A DNA stretch of 64,000 nucleotides from Bugula neritina (lineage: Eukaryota > Animalia > Bryozoa), in contig OZ037771.1 in the NCBI GenBank assembly GCA_964035545.1, positions 3,297,628-3,361,627 of the forward strand. The letters are read 5' to 3'. The position numbers were made by a program, and so were the translations under genes. Shown here piece by piece: positions 39,364 to 56,453 of this stretch. The notes under the pieces are model-generated. The model was not told the origin of the DNA. It ran no database searches and saw only the letters and a list, made by a program, of their open reading frames with translations. How positions within the stretch are numbered: position 1 is the stretch's first letter; every line of letters begins with the position of its first letter.

Positions 39364-42300
39364 TTATACTGGCGCCAAAGCTGCTGCCGCCGGTGTTACT
39401 GATGCTGTCACCGGTGTTACTGGTGCTGCCGCCGGTGTTACTGGTGCTGCCGCCGGTGTTACTGGTGCTGCTGCCGGTGTTACTGGTGCTGCTGCTGTTA
39501 CTGATGCTGCTGGCACTGTGGCAGCTGATGGAATGGTGATAGGGGGTACGCTGTCAAACATGTCCTGCTCTACAGGCTTCCTCACCCACTTGCCATATCC
39601 CCGAGCTTCAAGATTGGAGTAAAGGTCCCTTTTCACCTCCTGAAAATATCCACACACATGATATTTGATCTGCTGCCAGAAATCTGGTCAGAAAATGATT
39701 GGAAGTTTACAAGAGAGTTTCTTGAACCAATAAGTAGTGATAAAACATGTAAGTACCAATATTTAAGGTGACAATAAATTTTATCACTGTAAGAACTTTG
39801 TCATTTTCTATAAAAGGTGTCTAGAAAATGTGCAGAATGTGTTCTAATCACAAAAAAACTGTTACATTTCGAATATTGGGGTAGAAATCATATCTCAATC
39901 AAAATACTGATACAGGAAATACACAGAGCCAATTACCAACCTGGTATTGTACGGCTTTGTCTTTAGCAGCAGAGTAAATGTCCGCCTCAGAGCTTACAGC
40001 AGTCTTTTGCACTTTCCTAAAAATCAATGACTGAACAGATATTTTGCAAAATTATGCAACCATTTATTAATTACAGTATAACTTGATTATATGATAAATA
40101 TTTTGCTAATCATACTGAATCTACACTCATTGCCATGGCCATAGCCATTAGTTATATTACAATACTTTATATTATGATTGCATGCAACTTTAGGTAATAA
40201 AAGTATTTAGCTAATGGTAACCATATTTAGAGTGATCTATTCAAGAAATACGAAATAAAAAAAGAGAAGACGAAACCTAATTACCATCAAATGCTTACCT
40301 GAACTGAAGAAACAGCATTTTCTTAGATAAGCTGGAGTAGCTGTTGTCAAAGCAGATACCAGTTCTAGTGGTGAGTATTTCTGAGATGTCATCAGTTGAA
40401 AGCCACACAATCCTACAACAACAACGTTGTATTAAATGTGGTAATAAATGATTATGATATGAATCTCAGAGATTCAATGAAAACTATTAGTGAAAAATAC
40501 AAACAGGTATTGAATTAAATGTGGTAATGAATGTTTGTAAGACAAGTTTAATGATCCTAATGAGTGAAAAAATTGGTGAAAAAGAAAACAAATTTTATGA
40601 TTTTAAACAGTGGACACGTTCATTCTTGAAAGTTACTCGGATGAATCATTCAAAATCATAAGGTTATAAAACAGACCTGGGTGAATGATATGTGGCAAAA
40701 AGCAAACTAATTAGTAATCAGCATCAAATTGTATTTAGTTTTCATTTTTCTTGCTTACAAAACTTTTCATCACATCTTTTAAAAGTTCAAATTTTTCATC
40801 GCTGTTGCATTGCACAATATTTAAAAAACGCAAGCTAGAGATGGTTACACAGCAAATTATACGTGAACTCAGCATTTAGAGACAATAATAATGCCTGGGG
40901 TACTTTCTCATATGTAATGAATCATAGGGCAGACAACTCACGAGTAGGTGGGGGGTTTGTGAGTGTCCCGAGGTTCAGGCATTACTGTTCCAATGATCTC
41001 TGGGCAATGATGTCTGTATGGAGCAGGTAGCTTCTCAATGAGCTCTAACTCATTAATACGGCCTTTAACATCAATAAAATAGCAACTGTAATACACAAGC
41101 TCATACTTGCAGACAACACACATATGAGCTATAGAGCAGGTGGGTGTTTACAAAAGGAACAATTACAGATATATTTCAGTTTAGTCACCCTCAAAACATT
41201 AGATACATGACAGCACAAATATCTCAACAACAAAATGTCTCAACAACTTCAAATCAAATCCTCCATAAATATCCAGTATTAGTTTTCGTTCATTCACAAG
41301 TTTTCACTGATCTTGTATATTTGTATGTGTTGCTAGCGAACATATTTACAACTGAAAATATACTGAAGTAAGGCATACGTTGATTACTTCAGCATATTGA
41401 AACATGCCTAGACTATGGGCTTACAACAATCACCATAACTATTAGGTTGGCCACCAGAAATAGCTGCTGTTATATACAGACAGCCAAGAGCTGTTGATAA
41501 ATTTCAAAGACTATCAAATATCACATTCTAGTATGTCATGGAGTACAAATAGACTGGCAGCTAGTATTACTGTATATTAGTTCAGCTATACGAGCTGAAG
41601 GCATGTGTACAATATAATAAACAGATGTAATGAGATACATACCATACAGCCCTCTGTATATATGAGCCTGATTAAACATGCTAGCCACAATGATGCTGGA
41701 GAAATAGACAGGCTGTATCAGCGTACTCAGCAGTGACCCTGTAAGTATTTCATACAACTATCACATAATATATACCTGTATATGTTTATATGTATATATG
41801 TATGTATGTAGGTATATATGTATGTAGGTATGTATCCATAACCATAACTGCTGCTACTCAGCAAAAAACACAATTTGCTAGTACACTGCATACTCACAAC
41901 CTTTAGGTATGCGACATCACGTTAAATCCATTATTCTTATAGAAATAAAAATAACAAACTGTTCTTGAAAACGTGTCGAGTAAATTTACAAGTTTTGAAC
42001 ACAATTACGATCATAAAATACATATCGACCTCAAAGTAAAATATATCAAATATTGACCACTAAGTTGAAAGTCTCTCCTACCTTGAAACCCGAGGACGGC
42101 CCACCTAGCCACCTTGTCACAGCAGGACATGTTCAAGTACCTGTCTCCAGATGCTATCCCATCTAGCACCTGCACCACATTCATTTCCTGTTCATTCACA
42201 GGCAGTGTACCTGTAACAACAACACACACATACTACTGTAAGTGGTGAATTACCTGTAGCAACATACACGTAGGTGGTATACTGTGAGAGTCAAGTGTAA

Positions 42301-45300
42301 ACTATAACTTGTGTACTAAACAACATACATAAATTCAACAATCAATAAACTATTTCGAAAATCTTTTTATAATAAATTGAGTAGTTGAAGTATTGAAGAT
42401 CTCCAACTGGTTATATAACATTTATAAGGATTTACACCATACATTTCCTATTAAGATAGTCAATATAATTAGGCATTCACTATTAAAAACTATTTTACGA
42501 ATTTCATGGTGCATTTCAATTTTTAATGAGAAGACAACTTCTATATATTATGAAAAATCTCTGGTAATAACTATCCAAAAAAGAACAGCCTAGTTACACA
42601 TTGACAGTCAATCACAAACTAGGAAGGTATAATGTAGAACAATCAGGAGGATAAGTACCCTGTCCAGTTTCCATCTTGACCCTCAGTTGACCCCTGCTAG
42701 CTCTCAGAGGATTCGTGTCGATGTTCTCAGATGAACTCTCGCCCTCCTTCAACAAACTGGAGGTGAAGACTCGAGAGTCTCCACAAGGAGGGGAACTTAT
42801 ATACAAGTGAAACTTCACTCCATCCGCCAACTTGTACGGAGCTCCGGAAGGATCTAGAACAGACACGTGAGTGGTACAAGTGACTAGAAACTATATGAAC
42901 CACCAGATTGTTTATTTGAATTACTAATTTATTTGACCTACTAATTTATTTGAATTACAAATTTATTTGAATTGCAAATTTACTTGAATTACTAATTTAT
43001 TTGAATTACTAATTTATTTGAATTACTAATTTATTTGAATTAACAATTTATTTGAATTACAAATTTATTTAAATTAACAATTTATTTGAATTACAAATTT
43101 ATTTGAATTGCAAATTTACTTGAATTACCAATTTATTTGAATTACAAAGTTATTTGAATTACTAATGTATTTGAATTACTAATTCAGCAAAGAACCTGAT
43201 CTAACTTGTTAGTCAAATGCTGTCTGCTACACTAGATTTGATCAAAGAGACCAAAGAGCTGACTGACACCAGAAACACTCACCATTGTTGACAGGCACCA
43301 GGATACTGGGCTGTGAGGCCTGCACCAACTCAACCTGCCTATACAGATATTTCTTCATAGCTCTTCTAACCAGAATCTCAGCGTGCATGTCATTGACTGG
43401 CAGACCAGAGGTTGCGATGAACTCACCGGAAATACATTTCGTACCTGTATAAGACAACCCTAGCTAGTAATATCCTAGATAATTCAGGGTTATACTCAGA
43501 TATAAGACAACTCCATCTAGTAATACCGAAAATACTTCAGATTTGCTATCAAGCCTCATCTGGTCAAGAGAATGATATTACAAGGTTCCAAGTAAGCAAA
43601 TATACAGTGCATATATCTGCTTTTCAAAAACACTGTTAATAAAAAGATATATAAAGCTATTATAGTAAAATCCCAACATAAAACAATACACAAATCATAT
43701 ATTCAAAGTTCTACAAATAGTTTCGAAGAATTAGTTCCAGGGCTACAGCGCAACGTCTACAGGCAGGTCACTTGACACAAACCTGAAGCAACTGCGAGCA
43801 CCTCTGCGGAGGTGAGGTCATCATCTCTGGTCATCACACAACCTGCCAGAACTTTCTTGGCGTGGAACTGAGAGCCGAAAATCGCCATCAGTTCACCATA
43901 CTTCTGCACCACCATGCGTTGGACCTGGCAAGAAACATTGTATATAGAAAGTCCATACGTAAGTAAATGTTACGAAGTTATATGGTAGACCTACTAAATG
44001 TGTTGTAGAGTTTATAGAGGCTCTACTGTTTATTATATGAGAATGCTGAATAAATCCCATCTCTCTTAGCAATTACGGTTCATAGATAGTTTATCACATT
44101 TACCCTAACGAAAAATAGTTGACAAGAAATGAACTCCTGCTATTATGTAATAAAATAAAATCAGGAGTTTACTAGATGAAACATGACTCCTACGGTAACT
44201 AACCTTAGTAGAAAGAGATTGATGGTCCAGCTTTCCAATATCCCCTCTCTTCATATCTGCAGCTGTCTTGGGAGAACTAAAATCCCCTGTCAAAAGAAGA
44301 TATAATGTTATTAAGAGAAGATATCTGCCAGCTATTGCCATAAAATGACCACCCACCAACAGCATGGAAATACGCTTTAATAAAAGTCATCAGTCACTGT
44401 CCTTTGCATAATTTTACTAAACCGTGCACCAAACAGTGAGCTGTGACCACACATAGCCTGTATCCTCAGTTGTTTGTGCAGCAGATGCTGTCCATGCAAC
44501 TGGAGCACCTGTTTGGCTCTATCACTTTCAGTAGAAGGTGGCACTTGGCAGATGACACATGTCAGTAACTTGACTCTTTGCACAGTGACCGACATGTGAC
44601 ACCAGCAGTCAGTGCTACTTTAGTAAGTGCAGTTGCTGCTGTTTGCTGCACACTGGGTGCTATGAGAGCACAGTCACAGAGCGCAGTAAACATGAACACC
44701 TGTAAATACAGAAGTTGTTAGCAAAAAGAGTTTTAAAACCCTACAGGATATGAGAATTTATTCTGTGAAAAACTTGACTCCCTTCCTCTGCCTATCACTA
44801 CTACAGGTTCTAAATATATCTAGGTGGTTTGGTTTCAATAGGTCATACAAATAGCATTGTCATGGTCATATACATTTAAATGTTTCCCATAATTCTAGAC
44901 GGTTTGCTTTATTTTTTATCCATTCTATCTGAAGAAAACACAGTGTTCACGAAATAACAAGTTTTCCACCAACCGCTTTTGACTCTGGAACCAGCAGTGG
45001 AATTTAAATTCAGAAATATCCATAAGGAAATGAATTAAATGTTTTATCTGCTAGAGAAAACTTTTAACTTAGTTGTTTCCAAAACAATGCATGTCAAAAG
45101 TAAAAAACACCCAATTGAAATTATTTTACAAACTTCAAAACTTATTCACGGAATAAAAAGCTTTTGTTTTATGAGATTTCAAACAAAACTGTTTATTATT
45201 CAACAGAATTCAGGGAAACTATACAGGAATGCCTCATTCAAAGTTTTTTTTGTAGGCTTTGCTATTAAAAAACTGAACAACAAGATATATTTCTTCTGTG

Positions 45301-48300
45301 TGGTGTCTAATCACAGAGGAAATAAGCCAAGCTTTAAATAGAACAGATTTCTCATTCCATTGTAAATACTCCACTCATCTTACTGATTAATGCCGGGCAG
45401 AACTCTCTCAAATAGAGTGTTTAGAAACTAGCAGTTTTCACCCTCCGTCCATCCTGCAAAATAATGACTAGAAATGACAACACATACCTAGAGGCAGCAG
45501 TAAGCAAATAGAACAGCACAGTCTTTATCTGGATGACTAGCGAAATTATGAAACATGTAACTTCCTAATGTTAAATGCCACAAAACTACTTGATATAAAT
45601 AAAAACCATAAGGAGAAATCCTAATAAAACTTCGACTTTTTTACAAAGAGAATTTTACTTTGTTTAATAAAATTAATTTAACAAGAAAAAATTAAATTAT
45701 AAGTAGATGCAACGGAAAAGAGAGAATATTAGTGGTAACAGAGAAAGAATAACTGATGTAGAGGAAACAATGCAATGGTTAGAAGAGCATTGAAAAAGAT
45801 GAGAAAACTCCTGAAAACATCAAATGTACACATTACGAGGGAAATACAATCAATAGAATAAAACACAAAACATCCATAAATATCCAACATTATTTGTATA
45901 GGGTAAGGATACAGTGAGGGGGTAACATACCTAAATTAAACTTATGCCCGTACACCTCCACTAAAATCACAGCCGCACAGTTGTGTTTGGCGTGCATCTT
46001 ACTTTTACCAGAGCCTTGGTATTCCTGCAACACGAAGCACACCATTCAGCATATGAAATGACATGAGCTTCCTGTACATCAGGGTAACAAAACTAAAAGG
46101 GGTTTATAGTCGCTATCCCAGTGAGGACCTCTGATGGAAAGGGGTTTTTGTAAGTGGTCTAATAACTTGTTTTCTATTATGGTACAGGAGCAATTATAAC
46201 TGAATGCTCTTCCTAACATCACCAATCGTACTTACTAGAATGTGTTTATTAAGCCATCAATCTAAACCTAGACCACAGAACAGGTTTAAAAGTTCTGCAC
46301 AAAAGGAGAGAGACGCTATAAACTTATAAACCTATATTAGTGCATCTAGTTTAGTCCAACTCACGTGTCCGTCCACAGTAGCCTTGGCTAGGAAAGTGTT
46401 ACCAACTCCTTGTGAACCCAGACATGTCACCTCAATGTTGATTTCTTTATCGACTTTCTCATTCAATATACTCATTGGTGTCTTCTGCAAACAAAGAGAG
46501 ATCCTTGTGAACATTATACGACACATCAGTTGATATTATACAACTCATCAGTTATTATTGTACACAAATCGACAAGAAATATGGTCAAACAATATTTTTA
46601 TATTTAAATCCCAAAATCACAAGTAATCATTTTAAGCTGAGATTCTGCCATTAGGAGACGACATGCTGGCGAGTGGACAGGAAATGAAAAGAGTAGAGCT
46701 TACCGGACCATCTGGATGCAGCACCATTTGGGCCTCCAGCGCTTGTCTAGCAACTTCCTGCTGGGCTTCCGCCGCTGACTCAGCAGCTACAAGTTATAAC
46801 TCAACGTCTTAATTGGTAGACAACACAACAGTACCTCTGAGAGGTACGCAAACAGTGACATGACACAACGTTGACTTGTGGGGCATGTCAAGTATAATCA
46901 ATATCACATTATATGACTACCAGGCTAGTTGCCATATATGGTACTCCAGCAATTACAAAATATAGTGCATATCCACTCGATCTATACACACAAAGATCTC
47001 TAAATATGTTTTAATGTAGGCCTAATTGATAAACAAAAAAGAAGTATTGCTAATATTAAAGTTTCATTACAAATACTATGGGATTCAATAGAAATTTTTA
47101 CAAAATCTCAGAGATTTTATAATGAAAAGGCTTTAATACCCATTCCTTAGCCTACATGAATACGTAGTGTAGACACTCACACGTGGCGCTGTACACTTTG
47201 TCACCGTGTGTGAATGTAGCTTTGTAAAGACTGCTTCCTTCAGATTCAGTCACCTCATACGGTATTGTCTTTTTCTTGAACATTCGCTTGAACTTGGCCA
47301 TTATTGGATTCTGGGGAAAGGCAAAGACAGCATAAATAAATGAGATTAAGAAAGATATGCCTTTAAAATCTGATCGAATTTACTGAAATATTTGCCAATC
47401 TATCTACTGATCACACTCCCTGCCAATCTATCTACTGATCACACTCCCTCCTAATCTATCTACTGATCATACTCCCTGCCAATCCATCTACTGATCATAC
47501 TCCCTGCCAATCTATCTACTAATCATACTCCCTGCCAATCTATCTACTCATCACACTCCCTCCCAATCTATTGCACTCACTCACACAGCTTAAACCACAA
47601 CACCCCATCATATCACTGCATCACAGCACCAGCATATCAAATGCTGGAGACAGACAGACAGAAAAAAGAATACCTGAACAGGTGTAGACGGAGCAGACGT
47701 CAGAGCACTGTTCTGTAAAGCACTGTTCTGTAAAGCACTGTTCTGTAAAGCGCTGTTCATAAGAGCAGCTGAAGCTTCTTCCTCAGTAGCCCCTACAAGT
47801 TTAAGTTGTATGAAAAACTCCCAGCCAAGTGACTTCTATTTTTCAGACAGTCCACAAACGTTCAGTTTAAAAAAATTCAATTCACAAATGATTAATAATT
47901 GCAAAACAGTTTTTGAAAAAAAATCCTATCAACTATTTATAATTTTTCATGTAACATAATTGTAAAATATTTTCTTTTTGTTTTATCACCTATGTGCTTA
48001 ATTAAATTAAAAAGATATTGTTTTACAAAGTTGTAAACTTCAAAACACAATGTAGAAACGGTTGATCATCCACATTATTTCTAGAATTGACAATAAATTA
48101 AAAACTTCAAGAGTCTGGTTACTTTAAGGTAATTACACTCAAAGCCAGAAAACTGTACACATTTCAAGTTCTACTTATCTTTTATATACTCACACTTTGA
48201 ACAATGAAAATATTTTTGACATTCTAAAAGATACGTCCAACAGAGTCACGGCCATCAAAATAAAGTGCATCTTAAAACAAACCAGTTTCAGTAATTGTCT

Positions 48301-51300
48301 GCCCATCAATGGTGGCCGATGCTTTATAGATAGGAGAGTCCTGGGAGTTGTCTGTTTCCAAGTTAATCTGAGGATTCCCAAATCTCTTATTGAACTTCTT
48401 GCTGAGAAAAAATGTTTTCGGGGCTTTCTGCAATCGTGAGAAACAAACAACACATCAGTTCAATTTGCACCTGAGATAACTTACCAAACTGCATTTCTAG
48501 GCAGAGGAAACAGAATACACAAAGCTATGAAATTACACAGTAATGAAAACAGGAGACCAGTAAACAAAATTTCAAGGTAAATTGGCTCCAAAAGACTTCA
48601 CAGGAAATGCACTACCAACAGGAAATGCACTAGTGACAGAAAATAAACGACTCACAGGAAATAAACTACTGACAAGAAATGAACTACTCACAGGAGCCGG
48701 AACGTGATGAGGATGGATAATGCTGGCAGCAGAAGCAGCCAAGATCTTCTGGCAGATCAACGCCTTGGCTTGTTTCTTGTTGCTACCTACAGATGGACAA
48801 TAAGACCATTACTACAGTTAAATATATACCATCAGCTGCTCCACACTCATAAAGGAAATATATACAGAAGGGATTAAATTCTCCAATATTCTGAATGGGA
48901 CAGCTTTGTCTTTGACAAGGACACTGCTGCCAAAGTACCGAATATGCAACTACACAGTAACTATATCAATTCTTTTATCTGAAACTGCCGGCAGATGTGA
49001 GCTATGAAAAATACTTACTAGACCATTTGGCAAATAGATCATCTACTCAATTAGCCAATTGTGGTGCAGAACCCAAGTATATATTCACAGCCCACAGCCA
49101 AATAATGAATCAGTAGAGCAGCGTCAGTAAATCAAGCAGGGCTACTTTAAAACCACCCTGAAGGTGTTCAAGTTGCAGGAAGCTTTACTTCAGTAAAAAA
49201 AACTACATTTTTAATGAAAAAGAGAAAACCAAGCACTTCAAAATATTATCACCACTGTCTGAGAATTGGACAGGTTAAATGGTAAGAATATCACTTAGCC
49301 CCCACCACTCACTCCCCCAATTTAACTGTGTAAAGCAGTAACTGAAATCTGCACCAAGACTAACCTGTCACTTCAAATGGTACTCCATCAATAGTAGTTG
49401 AGAAGTGACATAAGTGTTGGTTACCTTTAACCTCAATCCTGTGCTCCCATTCTAGCCCTGGCCACAGCCTGCCAACTACAGCTTGCGGAGGTTCAACCTA
49501 ACAATTAGTGGAGTACAAGACGTGTCTACACCCCACCGTGTCACTAACACAAATCAGGCATTCGGCAATATAATTCAATACAAACATGGCTTCTGTACTC
49601 GCTGTTACTGATAAATAATCTCAATGAAAAGGAGAGACTAAACTCTAATCGGCAAAATGGCATGAAAAGCTCACCGTAAACTACTTTGCCCCGTTTTAAT
49701 TATATTCATTGAAAAGAATCATCAAACAAACATGAAATAACGATTTTCCTGTGTTTCTATCAGCATATCATAAGCACACTAAAGGCTATACCATAATATT
49801 TATCTCAGAAATGAAACATTAGGATCTCAGTCTACACAACTACAAAAAATGGCCGTTATACTGATAAGTTGAGATGCAAACAAAAACTGCTTAGCAAGCA
49901 TTCTTATGCCAGCTAAATAAGGGGGTGGTATCCGAGCCTGCCTTCAACAGAACAGAGAACTAAACTAAAACACAACGCAAGACCGAACTGAAGTCAAGAA
50001 GGAAGAAAGAATACCCTTTCCTCAGCAGTTATCTCCCCATTCTCTAAGGCTAACAAGATTTTCTGACAGCATTCCATTTTGCATTGTTTCTTCGAAGCAG
50101 CTATAAAACAAAACATTGTGTGAGAGCGCAACTCCCCTTAATATTAAAAACTTGTACAATATCAATACACAATATTATGGAGCAGCCGTAGTCTAGGGGG
50201 TTAGAGTGTTTGCCTAGTAAACACGAAGTGATGGGTTCAAGTCCTAGTAATGCCCATTGGTGATGTTAGGAAGAGCATTCAGTCATAATTGCTCCTGTTC
50301 CGCATATGCATAAGTCCTTAGCCTGCTTTAAAAACCCCTTTCCATCAGGGGTACTAACAGGGATAATGACTTTAAACTTGCAAAAGTGAGTTTTTTTTTC
50401 TCAATACACTATATTAATAGAGACAGAGTAGCCGGTCTATGATAAATCAGTATCCATTGCCTAGTCTTTGGAGTTGTTCTCCCAGAGATCCTGTGTTACA
50501 GTAGAATACTACACATTGAACAACTCTCTTTGAAAGCCAGTCACAGCCTACATAGCCCTATCACTAAAGGTCAAACAAATCAGTCTGTATAGCTTACTAT
50601 CAAAGGGCAAAACAAGTCTATGAGGTTCACTAGGGAAAGCTGAACAGGCTTTAAACATTTTTTTACTAAAACTGCATGTGTATGAGAATCAGTTGACTGA
50701 CCAGTACTGCTGAACACTTTGTCTCCTATAGTAGTTGTCATGGAGATGAGTGGCTGGTTATTCAGCGTAGCCTCATTAGTCTGCTCCCAGAAGATATTGC
50801 TAAACTTCCTTGACACGAGAGATATTGGGTTGTTAGGCTACAAAAATACAACAACTCCCTGTACACAATCGCAAAAGGAATAACTGAAATCATGAAGTCA
50901 ATGAATAAAACTTGTTATTAAAAATGTACACTGGAAGGAATGGTGAGGGTCTAAGTTGGTAAAACGCAATCAGCACAAACTGTTTCCTTTAATTCTCAAA
51001 CTGTAACAACTTCTCTCTCTTGTCAACAGAATTGTATCTGAATCAACTATATGTTATACATATAAACAAGGTGAGACAGATAGTCATATGTGCCCGGCCA
51101 TCTCCAATAAAACAGAAAATCTGAGAGCTTACGTCATTCCCGCCTTCTGCACTCGGTAAGGTAATATCCTGCTGAGCAGGTTCAGCCACTTCCATAGACT
51201 CAGACTTCACTTTCTCCATATGCGGGGGTTTGACTTTGGGCGGAGGCTCAGCTATACTCCCATTGGCTAGTGCCTCCAGTGCTGAGACACACGCCAAGAA

Positions 51301-54300
51301 TTTAGCTTCTTTCTTATTACGACCTGAATGAAACACAACATACTGTAAAACTTTCTCCATCCTGCTTCATCTGATACAGCTGAGTTACTAATCAGAAGTG
51401 AAATATCTTCACAGGTGAGTGGATACACTTACCAGTGCCGTTAAATGTGATGCCCTGCAGTACAGTTGTAGCTGTACACTGCGGGGCGTGTGGAGGCCCC
51501 GCCAGCTGGAAGTCCCACTGCAGTCCTGGGAACTTCAGGTTAAGTTGACTAACAGGATTCAGACTCGTTGTCTCAGTTTTAACCTGAACAACAATGACAG
51601 TGTCAAGGGAGATAATAACCAATAGCTACAGAGTATGACGGGGGGAGGATAACAACCAATAGTTACGGAGTGTGAAAGGGATAACACAGCTTAACTTCTT
51701 ACTTTATTAACAATTTCCTAATTTTACCCTTAATTTCAGAAAATCTTTGCTGCAACTAACTATTGAAGCAGCGAGTCATGAGCTACTCACAGCTGACTCA
51801 CCTTTTTAATGGCTGGAGCCGCGTCAACACCTGGTGCGTCCGTGCTGTCAACCGGAACGGGACGTTTTAGTACCTTTTTAGGCCCCTCTGGCAGAACAAT
51901 AGTGCCTTTCTCTATTGCTTGCAGAATTTGGTCAGCAACAGCAGCCTTGGCTCCCTTTTTAGTTGAATCTAGATAATAGAGCCAAGAGTTGACAACTTCT
52001 GATCGATATTACTGAAAGAGTATATTCATATACTACTCTTTGCATACAGGTAATGCAGACAAGAGGCACATTGATTGTAAGAAGGAGCAGGCTATGGGGT
52101 TCATATTACTGAGAGAGTATATTCATATACAATGCAGAGAAATCAAGTTATAATAATATTAATACCTTCACATGCAGACAATATATAGAACACAGAGAAA
52201 AGTATTATCAGAAGGAGCAGGCTCTGCTACTTCTTACCAGATGCACGGAACTGCTGATGGTAAAACTCCACAGATGCAGTGTGCAGATGGGCATTTCCTG
52301 CGTTCAGCTTAGCTGACTGAAAGTCCCAGACGAGACTGGCAGCAGACAAACCAGCGGCCACTAGCTTGGAGTTCAGCTGGGAAAGTGGATTCGTCAAAGC
52401 AGACTTTGCTGCCTGGCCCTCCTCCTAGCAAAACAAACATGTAGGTTGGTAGGTAATATAAGATAAAAGGTACACCTCAAAGGGCTTGAAAATTCTGTTT
52501 ATCTCACAAAGAAACATGCCAGTGAGATGTGAATCTACGCAAGTTTGTAACAAGGTCTAACAAAGCACATCTTAAAAGATAATAAAGTCTATAAAAGGGC
52601 TCTAAACAGAAATGCATGATTTACATGTCCTGGACTATTCTAACTAGTTTCATGCAATAATTCAACAGTAAAACACATAACACTGTGTGAAGTGATGAGT
52701 CAACACACAACAACACAGATGAATACTTTTCATAAATACAGGGAAACTTTCAAAGCATCAACATTGACACATAATAATTTTCTTCCAAAATATACGAGGT
52801 AAAACCCCAGGGCATTAGAATGTTGATGCACATAGTAACTGCTCACGGCATCTGACAGTCACTAAGGACCTTAAGATGCCATGTTTAAACCACAGTTGTA
52901 CAAACACACCATTTTCTCTTCAGACGAGGGCACAGGGATCTCTAGAAGACCCACAGTGATGGCATCAATGATCCTCTGAGCCGTGGCAGCCTTGGCAACT
53001 TTTTTTGTGTTTCCTGCAGACAACAACCCAATGTATGTGAGGCCTAACAAAAATATCTTTACAAACAAATCAAATCATACATAAATAATGGAATTGTCTT
53101 CCCTCAACTTCAGCACAAGTTTTACACTTTACTTAGGTAACAAACACTGAAGTGTGAAAACTCCCACAAGTGTGCTTACCGAGTCCGGTGAAAGTGGTGC
53201 CAGCCACAGTGGAAAAGCAGACGAATGGCGTCACTTCACCGTTATATGTAAACTCCAGTTTCTCTGAATATTTCTTGGCCTGGAGAAGCTCGTACAGTTT
53301 GGGTATAACGTTAGACGCTGCCGGGTGCTGTCGGATGAATCATCACAACATCATCATACAATGAATAGTATGCGCACTAAATATAACAATAGTTGAAGTG
53401 ATAAGGTGAAGAAGATATTGCCAGCTTGCATGCTGGTAACAGCAAATGAGTAGTTATCTTCCCTCTACACAATATGCGTTCACGAGGGAAATAACTCCCA
53501 TGCTGACTAAAGTATACGTTTAAAACAGTGGCAAGCTCTAAACATATCCCAATACAAATATGCTTTTGTTTAGCTTGAGTTTTTAACTTTAGATTGAGGC
53601 TTGAGTTTAGAGTGTGACTGCTATATTTAATGGGGGAGAGTTTTTCAACCCATAAATATTTAATAAACTGCATTGTTTTTTAAAGCTCACAAATAAGTTT
53701 TATGGTGAAATTATTAAAATTAGCATATCAAATGGTTGGGGATTTATACATATCATTGTCATTATTTACTGTAAAATTTTATATAAGTATGCCTGCTGTA
53801 ATCGGTCTTAGAGTCATGCTTTAAAATGAAGTCCAGTTGCAAATCATCATAACATTTTAATTATTTTAATTACCATAAACTATAAGCAAACTCTAGAACT
53901 GAAAAAGCTGTAGGACTGTGAGTAAAACAGAGTTGCTAAACTAAACGTCAACTATAAAGTTTCTGAATAACTAGCAAACCTTTAGCCAACTCGTACATCT
54001 AACATATCTCAAATATTTTTTGAAACTTCAAGCTAAAATAAGACTCCCATTCAAATTCCAAGGTTAAAAATCAATTAAATTGCCTACTTTTGATCTCTGA
54101 TTCTATTCTGCAGTTATGGATATAAATAGTGTAATTTGTGTCTAATACTTTAAAAGAGCTAAAATAAAACCAATACCTAGTGCCAATAACGAAGTAAGAT
54201 ATTACAGAAACAAACACTTGGAATATTAGTCTGACAGGGGACATAACTACTAACCTCTTCAGGAACGAAGGCTAGGCTGTCACCGAGATACTGCAGCAAG

Positions 54301-56453
54301 TATTTAGAAGCATCATTATATGCATCATTCTGACTACGACCTGTCAATACATACAAAGCAGAGTATTTAGAATGTTCCAGTAAACTACTATAGTGAGAAA
54401 TTGTCTGCCCACAGCTGGGTCTTAACTTCAAAGATAAACTTCCAACTAAAACTCTAAATTAAAAGAACCATTGTTTTCACTCAACAATAATGCCAGATAG
54501 TAAAATGAAACTACCACATGCCTCCAGTTCCATTGAATTGGTTTAAAAAATAAAGAGAAGATTACTCCGCATACCAGTGCCGAAGAAATCGTGCTTTGCG
54601 TACGAGAATGAGGCTACATATATGCGCTCCTCGCCATCAACAACGCGAATATTTTGCACCAAACCAATTAGATTTTTCTGGTTCAGCATCTGAAGGGGAC
54701 TCAAGGCTGGCAGATTCTATAAAGTGGTAGATAGTTCACTATACAATGCTTATCAAACTATACCAAGTGATGTTGTGAGTGTGACTGCTAGGCAAGGGTT
54801 CAAATATGAGCACAACACTTATCAAATACAAGCATCTTTATATTTGCTGGGAGAAAATAACTACCAATATAAGCAGTAAATACTTGCAACAAAGTCACTA
54901 TCTCAAAACTACAATATATCTTCACTAACATGACAATATAGCTACAATTTTAGTAACAAACACTATTTTACAATAAGAAAAATCTTTGAAACATTTTTAG
55001 CAACAAAGTAAAAGCTAAGCATGCTAACTCATCAGTAATACTGTTTTCAGTTTGATTGTCATGACCACTAATATGTGAAAGTAAACATCTTAGACTGAGA
55101 TCTTACTGGTACCTTCAGTTGGGACTTTTGGCCAACTCCACCACGTGCACCCCATCCACGGCCTCGACCACTGACCATACGGGATGTTATTTGAGCGTTG
55201 GCCATCTGAAACACCTGGGCCTGTGGAAGTAGTGGGCCGGACCCATGTCCTGCTGAAGTTTACATGATAACAGTGCATGGTATCTAGCTCAATGACTTAG
55301 TAAGTGTTCACATTGAAGATAAGTCAGCAATCTCACGGGCTCTTCATTTTATAAATGAAAAACATGCTACAGAGTCTAGTGTCTAGATAGTATGAGCATG
55401 ATGATGAGTGATAATATACAGGATGCAGCATAAATGTTCTGTTTTCTTTACAAAAAAAACTATCAATAGCTAAAACATTACAGAAAAAATTTTCAATTGT
55501 AAAACCTCCATCTTGATTTTTACAAGAAATTAATTAAAGTAATACACTGAAATTGAGACCTTCAGTCAGTGTTTACAGCCCATACCTGAGGTATACACAT
55601 CATGGTTGAAGTCCTGGTGACTTTGAGATGTGAAGTTAGGCTTGAAGTCCTGCTGCGATGAAGGAGGTGTGAAGTACGGGGCCCTAGACTGTGAATCTGA
55701 TTGGCTGAACATCGAAGGTGACGGCTCAGCGTGCAACGATCCACCCTATCCGTGTACAGAAAGAATATGGAAATTAGGGCAAGTTGAGATCAAAAATAGC
55801 AAAAAATATAGACTAAACACTTAGTAGCATGTGAACTAAACACTTAGTAGCATGTGAACTGAACATTTGGTGGCGGGTAAACTGAGTGTCCCTAAAAACA
55901 GATATAATAAAGACGAGTAGCCTCACCTTGTGCCAGCCAGACCTCTGCTGCCACCCAATTCTTGCATCTGGTTTGGTGGACTGGTTGGGAGAAGAGTAGA
56001 AAGGAGTAGATGGTGTTTGGGGAGCAGGTTGAGTCCAGTTCTGTGTGCCTGGTGAATACATGATACAATACATGTCTTGATTGTATCATTAGTTCACACA
56101 CAGTAACAAGTTGTACAAAAATTATTTCGAAATATTGATAACATTTTATAAAATCATTTCACCAGATCAAGCTATCTACGGCCCGGTTTAATGGTGGCAC
56201 TACAAGTCTTGCTATAGATAAACTACTAGTTTATGGAAAACTATAGCAAAATATTTTATTTATAATTAGAATTTTAGAAGCCATTTCGAGGCTTCATGAA
56301 TTATATTGATTCTACAGAGTTTAGAAAGAGACTGAACACAGGTCTATGAGTACCTGGGTTGACTGGGTTAGCCTGTGCTGGAGAAGACATCCAATTGGTT
56401 GACTGATGGGACATTCCATTATCGTAGGGGTTGTAATACTGATTGTTTGCCAT
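39364..56453 (-). CDS. ADAR: Double-stranded RNA adenosine deaminase, ADAR2-like catalytic domain with ~9 dsRBM-like modules
   Basis: Deaminase motifs KVLAG, GTKCISGE, NDMHAEILVRR, FHLYISSPPCGDSR, RGQLRVK, MSCCDKVARWAVLGFQGSLL and GKWVRKPVEQDMF; repeated NP..L...F.G.G..KK.AK modules upstream; start MANNQYYNPY at 56453. Confidence 0.93.
39380..39512. repeat. Coding 21-bp repeat encoding (AAAPVTP)n in the ADAR C-terminal tail
   Basis: Tandem gctgccgccggtgttactggt units. Confidence 0.85.
42910..43184. repeat. Intronic 17-bp minisatellite, ~16 copies
   Basis: Unit aatttatttgaattact and variants. Confidence 0.9.
46097..46290 (-). mobile_element. tRNA-derived SINE, reverse orientation, in an ADAR intron
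   Basis: ctgatggaaaggggttttt and caggagcaattataactgaatgctcttcctaacatcaccaat are reverse complements of segments in 50257-50348. Confidence 0.8.
47393..47571. repeat. Intronic 28-bp minisatellite, ~6 copies
   Basis: Unit ccaatctatctactgatcacactccctg. Confidence 0.9.
48600..48695. repeat. 18-bp tandem repeat (~5 copies) derived from a splice-donor junction
   Basis: Units resembling acaggaaatgaactactc; the minus strand reads CCT|GTGAGT at the first and third copies. Confidence 0.75.
50179..50385 (+). mobile_element. tRNA-derived SINE, best-preserved copy
   Basis: Pol III A-box-like tagtctagggg and B-box ggttcaagtcc, followed by a body shared with two other copies. Confidence 0.8.

What the first reader, a model, noticed from the sequence alone, without database searches (positions are those of the whole stretch)
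42657..42680. ADAR carries a natural Gln at the base-flipping position (equivalent to hyperactive ADAR2 E488Q)
Seen: the spliced sequence RGQLRVKMETGQ-GTLPV, with codon CAG at 42662-42660. Known: human ADAR2 has RGQLRTKIESGEGTIPV, and E488Q in the GEG loop is the standard hyperactive, lower-selectivity variant used in editing tools. The zinc ligands and catalytic Glu (HAE, PC, SCxDK) are intact, with MHAE in place of CHAE. Inference: a naturally hyperactive or promiscuous editor.
Basis: partly seen in the sequence, partly recalled or inferred. Interest (0 to 1): 0.8.

Follow-up and report, generated by a model that had tools for sequence, protein, structure and literature searches.

The report
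Natural Gln at ADAR base-flipping site
A divergent RNA-editing enzyme gene (ADAR) of a moss animal naturally carries glutamine where nearly all ADARs have glutamate. This is the same change engineers use to make human ADAR2 hyperactive, and related species keep it, but whether the enzyme really is hyperactive has not been tested.

Summary
**Observation: confirmed.**
- On the minus strand, CAG at 42662-42660 is the last full codon of a deaminase exon.
- The exon splices G|GT to the next exon and reads ...RGQLRVKMETGQ|GTLPV.
- Alignment to solved human ADAR2 chains puts the Gln at residue 488 and the next exon's first Gly at 489.

**Not an error**
- Orthologous exons from independent assemblies of deeply diverged relatives share the same intron position.
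- They carry Gln (CAG in one species, CAA in another), Met (ATG in a third) or Glu (GAA in a more distant orthologue with canonical GEGTIPV).

**The gene looks functional**
- All nine deaminase exons are open with AG/GT borders.
- The zinc ligands, the catalytic Glu, and all but one of the listed IP6 and RNA-contact residues are kept.
- Non-synonymous divergence (about 0.25) is far below saturated synonymous divergence.

**How rare it is**
- Among 148 ADAR-family cluster representatives, 130 have Glu and 4 have Gln; two of those four are orthologues of this gene.
- A natural E488M is already published for Caenorhabditis ADR-2.

**Limits**
- "Hyperactive or promiscuous" remains an inference by analogy. 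The TWDG dimerisation helix has also diverged (VLDG).

The parts
42660..42662 (-). CAG codon = Gln at the position of human ADAR2 Glu488 (the base-flipping residue)
   Evidence: Sequence. PDB alignment (chain index 190 = residue 488). Orthologues carry CAG, CAA, ATG or GAA at the same place.
42659..42853 (-). Deaminase exon C: (D)PSGAPYKL...ISSPPCGDSR...RGQLRVKMETGQ plus the first base of the Gly489 codon. It holds zinc ligand Cys451, Arg455, the 5' RNA-binding loop and most of the flipping loop.
   Evidence: Pfam A_deamin E=4.3e-11. AG/GT borders and phase 1 in, phase 1 out. Residue mapping.
42211..42658 (-). 448-nt GT...AG intron splitting the Gly489 codon in phase 1. It lies 6 nt downstream of the homologous intron of the two paralogues.
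   Evidence: The same position is seen in L011, L012, L016 and L018. The paralogues split the Gly487 codon instead. No unusual RNA fold around the codon (z=0.44).
42082..42210 (-). Deaminase exon D: (G)TLPVNEQEMNVVQVLDGIASGDRYLNMSCCDKVARWAVLGFQ. It holds the rest of the flipping loop, the diverged dimerisation helix (VLDG in place of TWDG), Arg510, zinc ligand Cys516, Lys519, Arg522 and Trp523.
   Evidence: Pfam E=2.5e-10. PDB alignment starts at ADAR2 Gly489. Residue mapping.
43283..43444 (-). Deaminase exon B: (G)TKCISGEF...NDMHAEILVRR... It holds Thr375, Lys376, His394, the catalytic Glu396, Arg400 and Arg401.
   Evidence: Pfam E=1.1e-14. PDB ADAR2 42.7 bits against ADAR1 25.8 bits..
43783..43924 (-). 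Deaminase exon A: N-terminal part of the deaminase domain (VQRMVVQKYGEL...LAVAS).
   Evidence: tblastn against ADAR homologues. Aligns to ADAR2 residues 327-374. Borders.
41643..41738 (-). Deaminase exon E: (G)SLLSTLIQPVYFSSIIVASMFNQAHIYRGLY, with Ser531.
   Evidence: Pfam E=2.6e-07. PDB search..
40942..41062 (-). Deaminase exon F: ...LPAPYRHHCPEIIG...THKPPTY, with Lys594.
   Evidence: Orthologous exons are present in L011 and L012.
40299..40412 (-). Deaminase exon G: IVWLSTDDISEILTTRTG...SKKMLFLQF, with Lys629.
39941..40016 (-). Deaminase exon H: KVQKTAVSSEADIYSAAKDKAVQYQ, with Tyr658, Lys662, Tyr668 and Gln669.
39364..39639 (-). Last coding exon: EVKRDLYSNLEARGYGKWVRKPVEQDMF... (Lys672, Trp687, Lys690), followed by a PVTPAAA-type low-complexity tail and the stop codon.
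45911..54716 (-). Context only: an upstream run of about nine two-exon dsRBD-like modules of the same gene. This is the subject of a separate finding.
   Evidence: Open frames listed. tblastn to dsRBDs of ADAR homologues is best at 51616-51428 (E=1e-5) and weaker elsewhere. Pfam on the half-domain exons found nothing.

Best explanation
This is a real, selectively maintained gene for a divergent ADAR-type adenosine deaminase. Its deaminase domain is ADAR2-like, and a long array of dsRBD-like modules lies upstream. In this lineage the base-flipping Glu of the Gly-Glu-Gly loop was replaced by Gln through a single G-to-C change in the first codon base.

Shown:
- the codon, the splice junction and the alignment register;
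- retention of the zinc ligands, the catalytic Glu, and all but one of the listed IP6-binding and RNA-contact residues;
- conservation of Gln in at least three deeply diverged species;
- purifying selection on the deaminase exons.

Inferred:
- The enzyme is catalytically active.
- As in engineered E488Q enzymes, the neutral amide inserts into the minor groove and hydrogen-bonds the orphan base without first needing protonation.
- Base flipping would then be more efficient, less pH-dependent and less selective for neighbouring bases than in a Glu version of the same protein.
- Combined with many dsRNA-binding modules, this suits bulk or hyper-editing of long dsRNA, while the two canonical GEG paralogues in the same genome remain available for regulated editing.
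For: Codon and junction.

Register: Gln at ADAR2 residue 488, with E488Q chains as top hits; the next exon starts at Gly489.

Intact machinery in human ADAR2 numbering: H394, E396, C451, C516, K376, R400, R401, R455, R474, R477, R481, K483, E485, G487, G489, T490, P492, R510, K519, R522, W523, S531, K594, K629, Y658, K662, Y668, Q669, K672, W687 and K690 are all kept.

Orthologues: L011 has CAG; L012 and L021-L023 have CAA; L016/L013 have GAA with GEGTIPV and TWDG; L018-L020 have ATG. All share the phase-1 intron in the Gly489 codon, and the HAE exon reads MHAE in the window, L021 and L016 and LHAE in L018.

Selection: pN is 0.22-0.31 against a saturated pS of 0.70-0.85.

Paralogues with GEGTIP exist in the same genome.

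Literature:
- E488Q raises catalytic activity through enhanced base flipping and fits a requirement for Glu488 protonation (PMC8053123, PMC11334849).
- Most polar-neutral or positive substitutions at E488 improve editing in a deep mutational scan (PMC8809894).
- The same change in Drosophila ADAR gives about 20 times more editing events and a weaker neighbour preference (PMC5769745).
Against:
- No transcript-derived protein of this gene appeared in the protein libraries.
- This gene is the most divergent of the three ADAR-like genes. Its exons D and E together score about 60 bits over about 77 aa against human ADAR2, whereas the paralogues score 73-89 bits over 63 aa.
- The 488 position is not fixed within the orthologue group (Glu, Gln, Met). 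Loop positions 491-492 also vary: TLPV, TLTV, TVLF, TIPV.
- The TWDG dimerisation motif reads VLDG here and NWEA, SWEG or SWEA in relatives. Mutating this motif, D503A above all, greatly lowers editing in human ADAR2 (PMC11334849).
- Human ADAR3 is called non-functional (PMC11334849); from my own knowledge it keeps its catalytic residues, so intact motifs do not prove activity.
Confidence: 0.5

Rival explanations
1. Specificity shift rather than hyperactivity. The Gln, together with the changed loop residues (Thr486, Leu491) and the changed dimerisation helix, retunes which adenosines or orphan bases are accepted, without a higher overall rate. This would resemble the natural E488M of Caenorhabditis ADR-2, which was fixed together with E485D and two other changes.
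For: PMC9989829 links the fixed E485D and E488M changes in ADR-2 to a shifted neighbour motif. One orthologue of this gene carries Met at the position. Natural Met also occurs in Artemia ADAR. Loop residues 486 and 491-492 vary in this clade.
Against: In every enzyme tested so far, E-to-Q raised activity as well as loosening preference (PMC5769745, PMC8809894). Glu485 is unchanged here, unlike in the nematode case.
Confidence: 0.25
2. Tolerated drift in a fast-evolving paralogue whose main job does not depend on editing. It would bind or mask dsRNA through its many dsRBD-like modules, or regulate the canonical ADARs by heterodimerising with them, so the flipping residue would no longer be constrained.
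For: The position takes Glu, Gln or Met among orthologues. The TWDG helix and loop positions 491-492 also vary. The gene is the most divergent of the three paralogues. ADAR3 is a precedent for a non-functional ADAR that may inhibit the others by dimerising with them (PMC11334849).
Against: Every zinc and catalytic residue, all but one of the IP6-binding residues and the Arg/Lys RNA contacts are kept across species whose synonymous sites are saturated. Gln itself is retained in three such lineages with a synonymous CAG/CAA difference. Both facts argue for constraint on the catalytic pocket and on this residue.
Confidence: 0.2
3. Artefact: a sequencing or assembly error at the codon, a wrong alignment register, or a wrong splice model.
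For: Reads of this species could not be inspected.
Against: Two independent alignments fix the register. The splice sites are canonical and the only alternative acceptor gives a stop. Independent assemblies of three other species show the same exon end, with Gln or Met at this codon.
Confidence: 0.02
4. The genomic CAG is itself an editing target (Q-to-R recoding, CAG to CIG) guided by an intronic complementary sequence, so the protein would carry Arg or a Gln/Arg mixture at the flipping position.
For: The codon lies next to an exon-intron border, as at the GluA2 Q/R site. Arg and Lys occur naturally at this position in a few ADAR-family sequences.
Against: There is no stable local structure: the 201-nt fold has z=0.44, and the only inverted repeats are short AT-rich ones inside the intron.
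Confidence: 0.03

Closest known systems
Human ADAR2 (ADARB1) deaminase domain, wild type and the engineered E488Q variant (PDB 1ZY7, 5HP2/5HP3, 5ED1, 6VFF)
   Same: Every exon matches ADAR2 best among solved structures. The zinc ligands, the catalytic Glu, all but one of the IP6 ligands and the RNA-contact arginines are the same. The loop reads G-Q-G-T-x-P-V, as in the E488Q crystal chains.
   Different: The Gln is natural here, not engineered. Other differences are S486T, I491L, C393M, S517C, E689R, a 4-aa insertion in the 5' binding loop, a 2-aa insertion after the flipping loop, VLDG in place of TWDG, a low-complexity C-terminal tail, and many more dsRBD-like modules than ADAR2's two.
Caenorhabditis ADR-2 with natural E485D and E488M (PMC9989829; structure 8ZEN)
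   Same: It is a natural, fixed replacement of the base-flipping Glu in an ADAR that keeps its catalytic residues. Met at this position also occurs in one orthologue of the present gene.
   Different: The residue there is Met, not Gln, and E485 is also changed in nematodes whereas it is kept here. The two cases lie in different phyla and arose independently. ADR-2 is known to be active and has a documented motif shift; this protein is untested.
Drosophila ADAR E488Q catalytic domain (HyperTRIBE, PMC5769745)
   Same: It shows that the Glu-to-Gln effect carries over to an invertebrate ADAR2-type enzyme.
   Different: That variant is an engineered fusion construct. [quoted passage not shown]
ADAR3 / ADAD-type non-editing relatives
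   Same: They are divergent paralogues that sit beside canonical ADARs and may regulate them or simply bind dsRNA.
   Different: ADAD proteins are described as catalytically dead. Here every catalytic and cofactor residue examined is present except E689 (Arg here).

Membership tests
ADAR (adenosine deaminase acting on RNA) | A_deamin (PF02137) editase-type deaminase domain | tested here: met
   Four exons each pass the Pfam cut-off and match in the six-frame genome search. The remaining exons align to ADAR2 residues 567-701.
ADAR (adenosine deaminase acting on RNA) | Zinc ligands His394, Cys451 and Cys516, and the catalytic Glu396 | tested here: met
   MHAE, PPCGD and SCCDK align to these positions.
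ADAR (adenosine deaminase acting on RNA) | Inositol hexakisphosphate (IP6)-binding residues | tested here: met
   K376, R400, R401, K519, R522, W523, S531, K629, Y658, K662, Y668, Q669, K672, W687 and K690 are kept; E689 is Arg. The residue list is from my knowledge of the ADAR2 structure.
ADAR (adenosine deaminase acting on RNA) | Gly-Glu-Gly base-flipping loop (called 'strictly conserved' in PMC11334849) | tested here: not met
   The loop reads Gly-Gln-Gly. This is the finding itself. The feature is not universal: 18 of 148 cluster representatives lack Glu.
ADAR (adenosine deaminase acting on RNA) | N-terminal double-stranded RNA-binding domains | tested here: inconclusive
   tblastn aligns dsRBDs of ADAR homologues to upstream exons (best E=1e-5), and about nine dsRBD-like two-exon modules are visible. 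Pfam dsrm does not score the half-domain exons.
ADAR (adenosine deaminase acting on RNA) | TWDG dimerisation helix | tested here: not met
   It reads VLDG: Asp503 and Gly504 are kept, Thr501 and Trp502 are replaced. TWDG is canonical in 73 of 91 Glu-bearing hits.
ADAR (adenosine deaminase acting on RNA) | A-to-I deamination of dsRNA | not testable with these tools
   This needs an enzyme assay or an editome.
Hyperactive E488Q-type ADAR variants | Gln at the residue that intercalates opposite the orphan base | tested here: met
Hyperactive E488Q-type ADAR variants | Higher deamination rate, reduced pH dependence and weaker neighbour preference than the Glu form | not testable with these tools
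   Known only for human ADAR1 and ADAR2 and for fly ADAR (PMC8053123, PMC5769745, PMC8809894).
ADAD / catalytically dead ADAR relatives | Loss of catalytic or zinc-binding residues | tested here: not met
   All are present, so the gene is not filed here.

The most novel reading that the evidence does not exclude
A clade of bryozoan ADARs has naturally fixed the 'hyperactive' E488Q state. It has kept it for a long evolutionary time, in a protein with about nine dsRNA-binding modules and a co-diverged dimerisation helix. That would make a constitutive, pH-independent hyper-editor of long dsRNA, for example against viruses or transposons. It would also show that Glu488 is conserved elsewhere to restrain and regulate editing rather than to catalyse it, and it would offer a natural high-activity scaffold for RNA-editing tools.
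Probability: 0.3. Interest if true: 0.75.

Novelty: new variant of a known kind. Interest (0 to 1): 0.55.

Why it matters
Reviews and comparative papers call Glu488 of the Gly-Glu-Gly loop strictly or ultra-conserved. Yet mutational work shows Glu is not the most active residue there, and Gln is the standard hyperactive substitution.

A natural Gln form that has been kept by selection would do three things:
- It makes the question "why do ADARs keep a sub-optimal Glu?" directly testable, by comparing Gln and Glu forms in a native scaffold for rate, pH response, neighbour preference and toxicity.
- It adds a second kind of natural exception beside the nematode E488M.
- It points to natural enzymes, and to compensating changes such as the altered dimerisation helix, that tolerate high flipping efficiency. 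That is useful for editing-tool design.

The small survey here also shows that about one in eight ADAR-family sequence clusters lacks Glu at this site while keeping the catalytic motifs. "Strict conservation" is therefore overstated.

Tried and rejected
- **Processed pseudogene as a fossil cDNA.** I checked whether the intronless A_deamin match on contig C160 was a retrocopy of this gene. It is an unrelated AT-rich ADAT1-like sequence with in-frame TAA/TAG codons.
- **Intronic editing-complementary hairpin at the CAG codon.** The fold is no better than shuffled sequence, and the only inverted repeats are short ones inside the intron.
- **Pfam dsrm on the upstream half-domain exons.** No hits.
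- **Per-variant E488 values from the deep mutational scan.** The stored supplement is truncated.
- **Kuttan and Bass 2012.** The paper is not held.
- **Sample names of the orthologue contigs.** They were not found in any paper, so the species of L011, L012, L016 and L018 remain unnamed.
- **P0142 and P0108 as further orthologues.** Their identity to this gene is no higher than that of generic ADARs, so I did not count them.
- All searches were exon by exon, by reference. Identity and dN/dS counts were summed numerically across exons.
Full report
**Where and what**

The window is G000:C7:3297628-3361627 of a 216-Mb animal assembly. Earlier notes of this scan call it a bryozoan (Bugula). I did not verify the species.

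On the minus strand, reads ...AGG GGT CAA CTG AGG GTC AAG ATG GAA ACT GGA CAG G|GTACTT.
- CAG is at 42662-42660.
- The exon ends with a lone G at 42659.
- The donor GT is at 42658-42657.

One search shows the acceptor ...ttgttgttacag|GT ACA CTG CCT GTG AAT GAA, with the exon starting at 42210. The junction gives Gly and then TLPVNEQ. The nearest upstream AG would run into a stop.

**Register**

- phmmer of the exon against all PDB chains finds human ADAR2 (E=1.4e-12). The Gln falls on chain index 190, which is residue 488 by the offset 298 that also puts Cys451 on PCG. The E488Q crystal chains score slightly above wild type.
- The next exon, searched alone, begins at chain index 191, which is Gly489, and runs through SCSDK.

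The two exons abut exactly at 488|489, so a shifted register is excluded.

**Gene integrity**

- tblastn with full-length ADAR homologues and inspection of the borders give nine deaminase exons: 43924-43783, 43444-43283, 42853-42659, 42210-42082, 41738-41643, 41062-40942, 40412-40299, 40016-39941 and 39639-39364.
- All have AG/GT borders, consistent phases and no stops.
- I aligned each exon to a vertebrate ADAR2 representative (P0080). Its numbering equals human ADAR2 plus 52, checked at HAE, GEG and the C-terminus.
- Kept: H394, E396, C451, C516; the IP6 ligands K376, R400, R401, K519, R522, W523, S531, K629, Y658, K662, Y668, Q669, K672, W687, K690; and the RNA contacts T375, R455, R474, R477, R481, K483, E485, G487, G489, T490, P492, R510, K594.
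- Changed: C393M, S486T, E488Q, I491L, T501V, W502L, S517C, E689R, plus small insertions in the 5' binding loop and after the flipping loop.
- The lists of IP6 and RNA-contact residues come from my knowledge of the ADAR2 structures. The review PMC11334849 confirms the loop, several of the arginines and the TWDG helix.

**Which ADAR**

- For exons B, C, D and E, human ADAR2 outscores ADAR1: 42.7 against 25.8, 50.7 against 36.1, 33.2 against 27.7 and 27.4 against 16.7 bits.
- The best named full-length relatives of exon C are "double-stranded RNA-specific editase 1-like" or "editase Adar" proteins.
- The genome has two further ADAR-like genes, on C4 near 23.46 Mb and on C2 near 5.15 Mb, both with GEGTIP and CSDK. 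It also has an ADAT1-like gene.
- The corresponding paralogue exons score 73-89 bits over 63 aa against human ADARs. That is well above this gene, which is therefore the divergent member of the set.
- Their homologous intron splits the Gly487 codon; here it splits the Gly489 codon, exactly 6 nt downstream.

**Orthologues**

A full HMMER search of 1.84 billion cluster representatives with the exon and a profile search found single-exon ORFs from other assemblies. I fetched their contigs. All share SSPPCGDSR, RVK(I/M)E and the phase-1 intron in the Gly489 codon. The HAE exon, where it lies on the contig, reads MHAE (window, L021, L016) or LHAE (L018).

| Locus | Codon at 488 | Loop after 488 | Helix (TWDG position) |
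|---|---|---|---|
| Window | CAG Gln | GTLPV | VLDG |
| L011 | CAG Gln | GTVLF | NWEA |
| L012, L021-L023 | CAA Gln | GTLTV | SWEG |
| L018-L020 | ATG Met | GTIPV | SWEA |
| L013-L016 | GAA Glu | GTIPV | TWDG |

L021 also has several two-exon dsRBD-like modules upstream.

Per-exon Nei-Gojobori counts, summed without joining sequences, give pN of 0.22-0.31 against pS of 0.70-0.85. Synonymous sites are saturated, and the coding sequence is under purifying selection. Gln has therefore been retained in three old lineages, with a synonymous CAG/CAA difference. The most distant orthologue keeps the ancestral Glu, and one lineage has moved to Met.

**How unusual**

- Of 148 representatives aligned at this position, 130 have Glu. 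Four have a genuine Gln; a fifth tallied Q came from a spurious stretch in P0021, whose real loop has Glu. Four have Met, three Lys, and single cases have Arg, Asp, Ala, Ile, Val or Ser.
- Two of the four Gln cases are orthologues of this gene. The others are a partial ADAR from run ERR1719423 (GQGTIPVE) and a firefly paralogue (GQD).
- Met occurs in the named ADAR of Artemia.
- Wherever the sequence is long enough, these non-Glu proteins keep HAE, PCG and CxDK.

**Literature**

- The literature calls Gly-Glu-Gly strictly conserved (PMC11334849) and E488 highly conserved (PMC8053123).
- Zhang et al. 2023 found E488 ultra-conserved in more than 30 non-nematode ADARs. They reported the natural E485D and E488M changes in Caenorhabditis-group ADR-2 and linked them to a shifted recognition motif (PMC9989829).
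- I found no report of a natural Gln, and none on bryozoan ADARs. The library does not hold most subscription papers.

**Mechanism by analogy**

- Glu488 occupies the space left by the flipped adenosine and contacts the orphan base. Protonation appears to be needed, and Gln mimics the protonated state, flips more efficiently and edits faster (PMC8053123, PMC11334849).
- A deep mutational scan found that changing E488 to positive or most polar-neutral residues improves editing, and that E488Q increases off-target editing (PMC8809894).
- The same change in the Drosophila catalytic domain gave about 20-fold more editing events and a weaker 5'U/3'G preference. The authors could not establish a stable cell line (PMC5769745).
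- These results make higher, less selective and less pH-dependent flipping the most likely effect of the natural Gln.

**Reasons for caution**

- Activity and expression are untested.
- The TWDG helix docks into the partner monomer's active site and touches residue 488's backbone, Gly489 and Thr490 there. Disrupting it, D503A above all, greatly lowers editing (PMC11334849). It has diverged in every Gln or Met orthologue.
- All Gln-bearing sequences seen have a non-canonical helix (the three Gln orthologue lineages counting the window, plus P0065 and P0146), against 18 of 91 Glu-bearing ones. This hints at coupled change, but it rests on only three independent origins and is confounded by overall divergence.
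- The variability of the site within the clade (Glu, Gln, Met) also fits relaxed constraint on the loop.

**Steps not done**

- There is therefore no whole-protein search, fold or tree. Every search used single exons by reference.

**Verdict**

The functional reading is plausible but unproven. I class it as a new variant of a known kind.

Noticed in passing
G000:C160:32084-32617 (-), L004 about 1501-2034: An AT-rich, intronless ADAT1-like deaminase match with 13 in-frame TAA/TAG codons and no TGA. One of them sits exactly where the catalytic Glu of HAE belongs (...DMHA*IL...). This fits the peritrich-ciliate nuclear code (TAA/TAG = Glu), so contig C160 may come from a ciliate epibiont or contaminant.
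   Followed up: partly
window 42211-42658, compared with L001 and L002: The intron in the flipping loop splits the Gly489 codon in this gene and its orthologues, but the Gly487 codon in the two paralogues. Both are phase 1 and they lie exactly 6 nt apart (G|GT GAA G|GT), an apparent case of intron sliding. It predates the Glu-to-Gln change, because the Glu-bearing orthologue already has the shifted position.
   Followed up: partly
P0001 (KAI5640413.1, Phthorimaea operculella): The gene model of a moth ADAR contains about ten tandem copies of the segment encoding the flipping loop and dimerisation helix (CKGQLRTKIES[G/N]EGTIPVKNCTNLIQTWDGVLQ). It could be a tandem exon array, possibly of alternative exons, or an assembly or annotation artefact.
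   Followed up: no
P0070/P0160-P0162 (Artemia ADAR, AOV92938.1); P0146 (Abscondita terminalis): The named ADAR of the brine shrimp Artemia has Gly-Met-Gly at the flipping position, with CHAE, PCG, SCSDK and TWDG intact. A firefly paralogue has Gly-Gln-Asp. I found neither mentioned in the papers searched.
   Followed up: partly
window 42082-42210 (exon D); L011, L012, L018: The conserved TWDG dimerisation motif reads VLDG here and NWEA, SWEG or SWEA in the Gln or Met orthologues, but TWDG in the Glu orthologue. This may be co-variation between the flipping residue and the helix that docks on it.
   Followed up: partly
window 39364-39540 (-): The protein ends in a low-complexity tail of repeated PVTPAAA-type units after the conserved WVRKPVEQDMF motif. 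Human ADAR2 ends a few residues after that motif.
   Followed up: no
window about 42917-43100: The intron between deaminase exons B and C holds a tandem array of a roughly 20-nt AT-rich unit (aattcaaataaattagta and variants).
   Followed up: no
window 45911-54716 (-): About nine dsRBD-like modules, each split over two exons, lie upstream of the deaminase domain. The related species contig L021 shows the same two-exon modules. This is already the subject of another first-stage note.
   Followed up: partly
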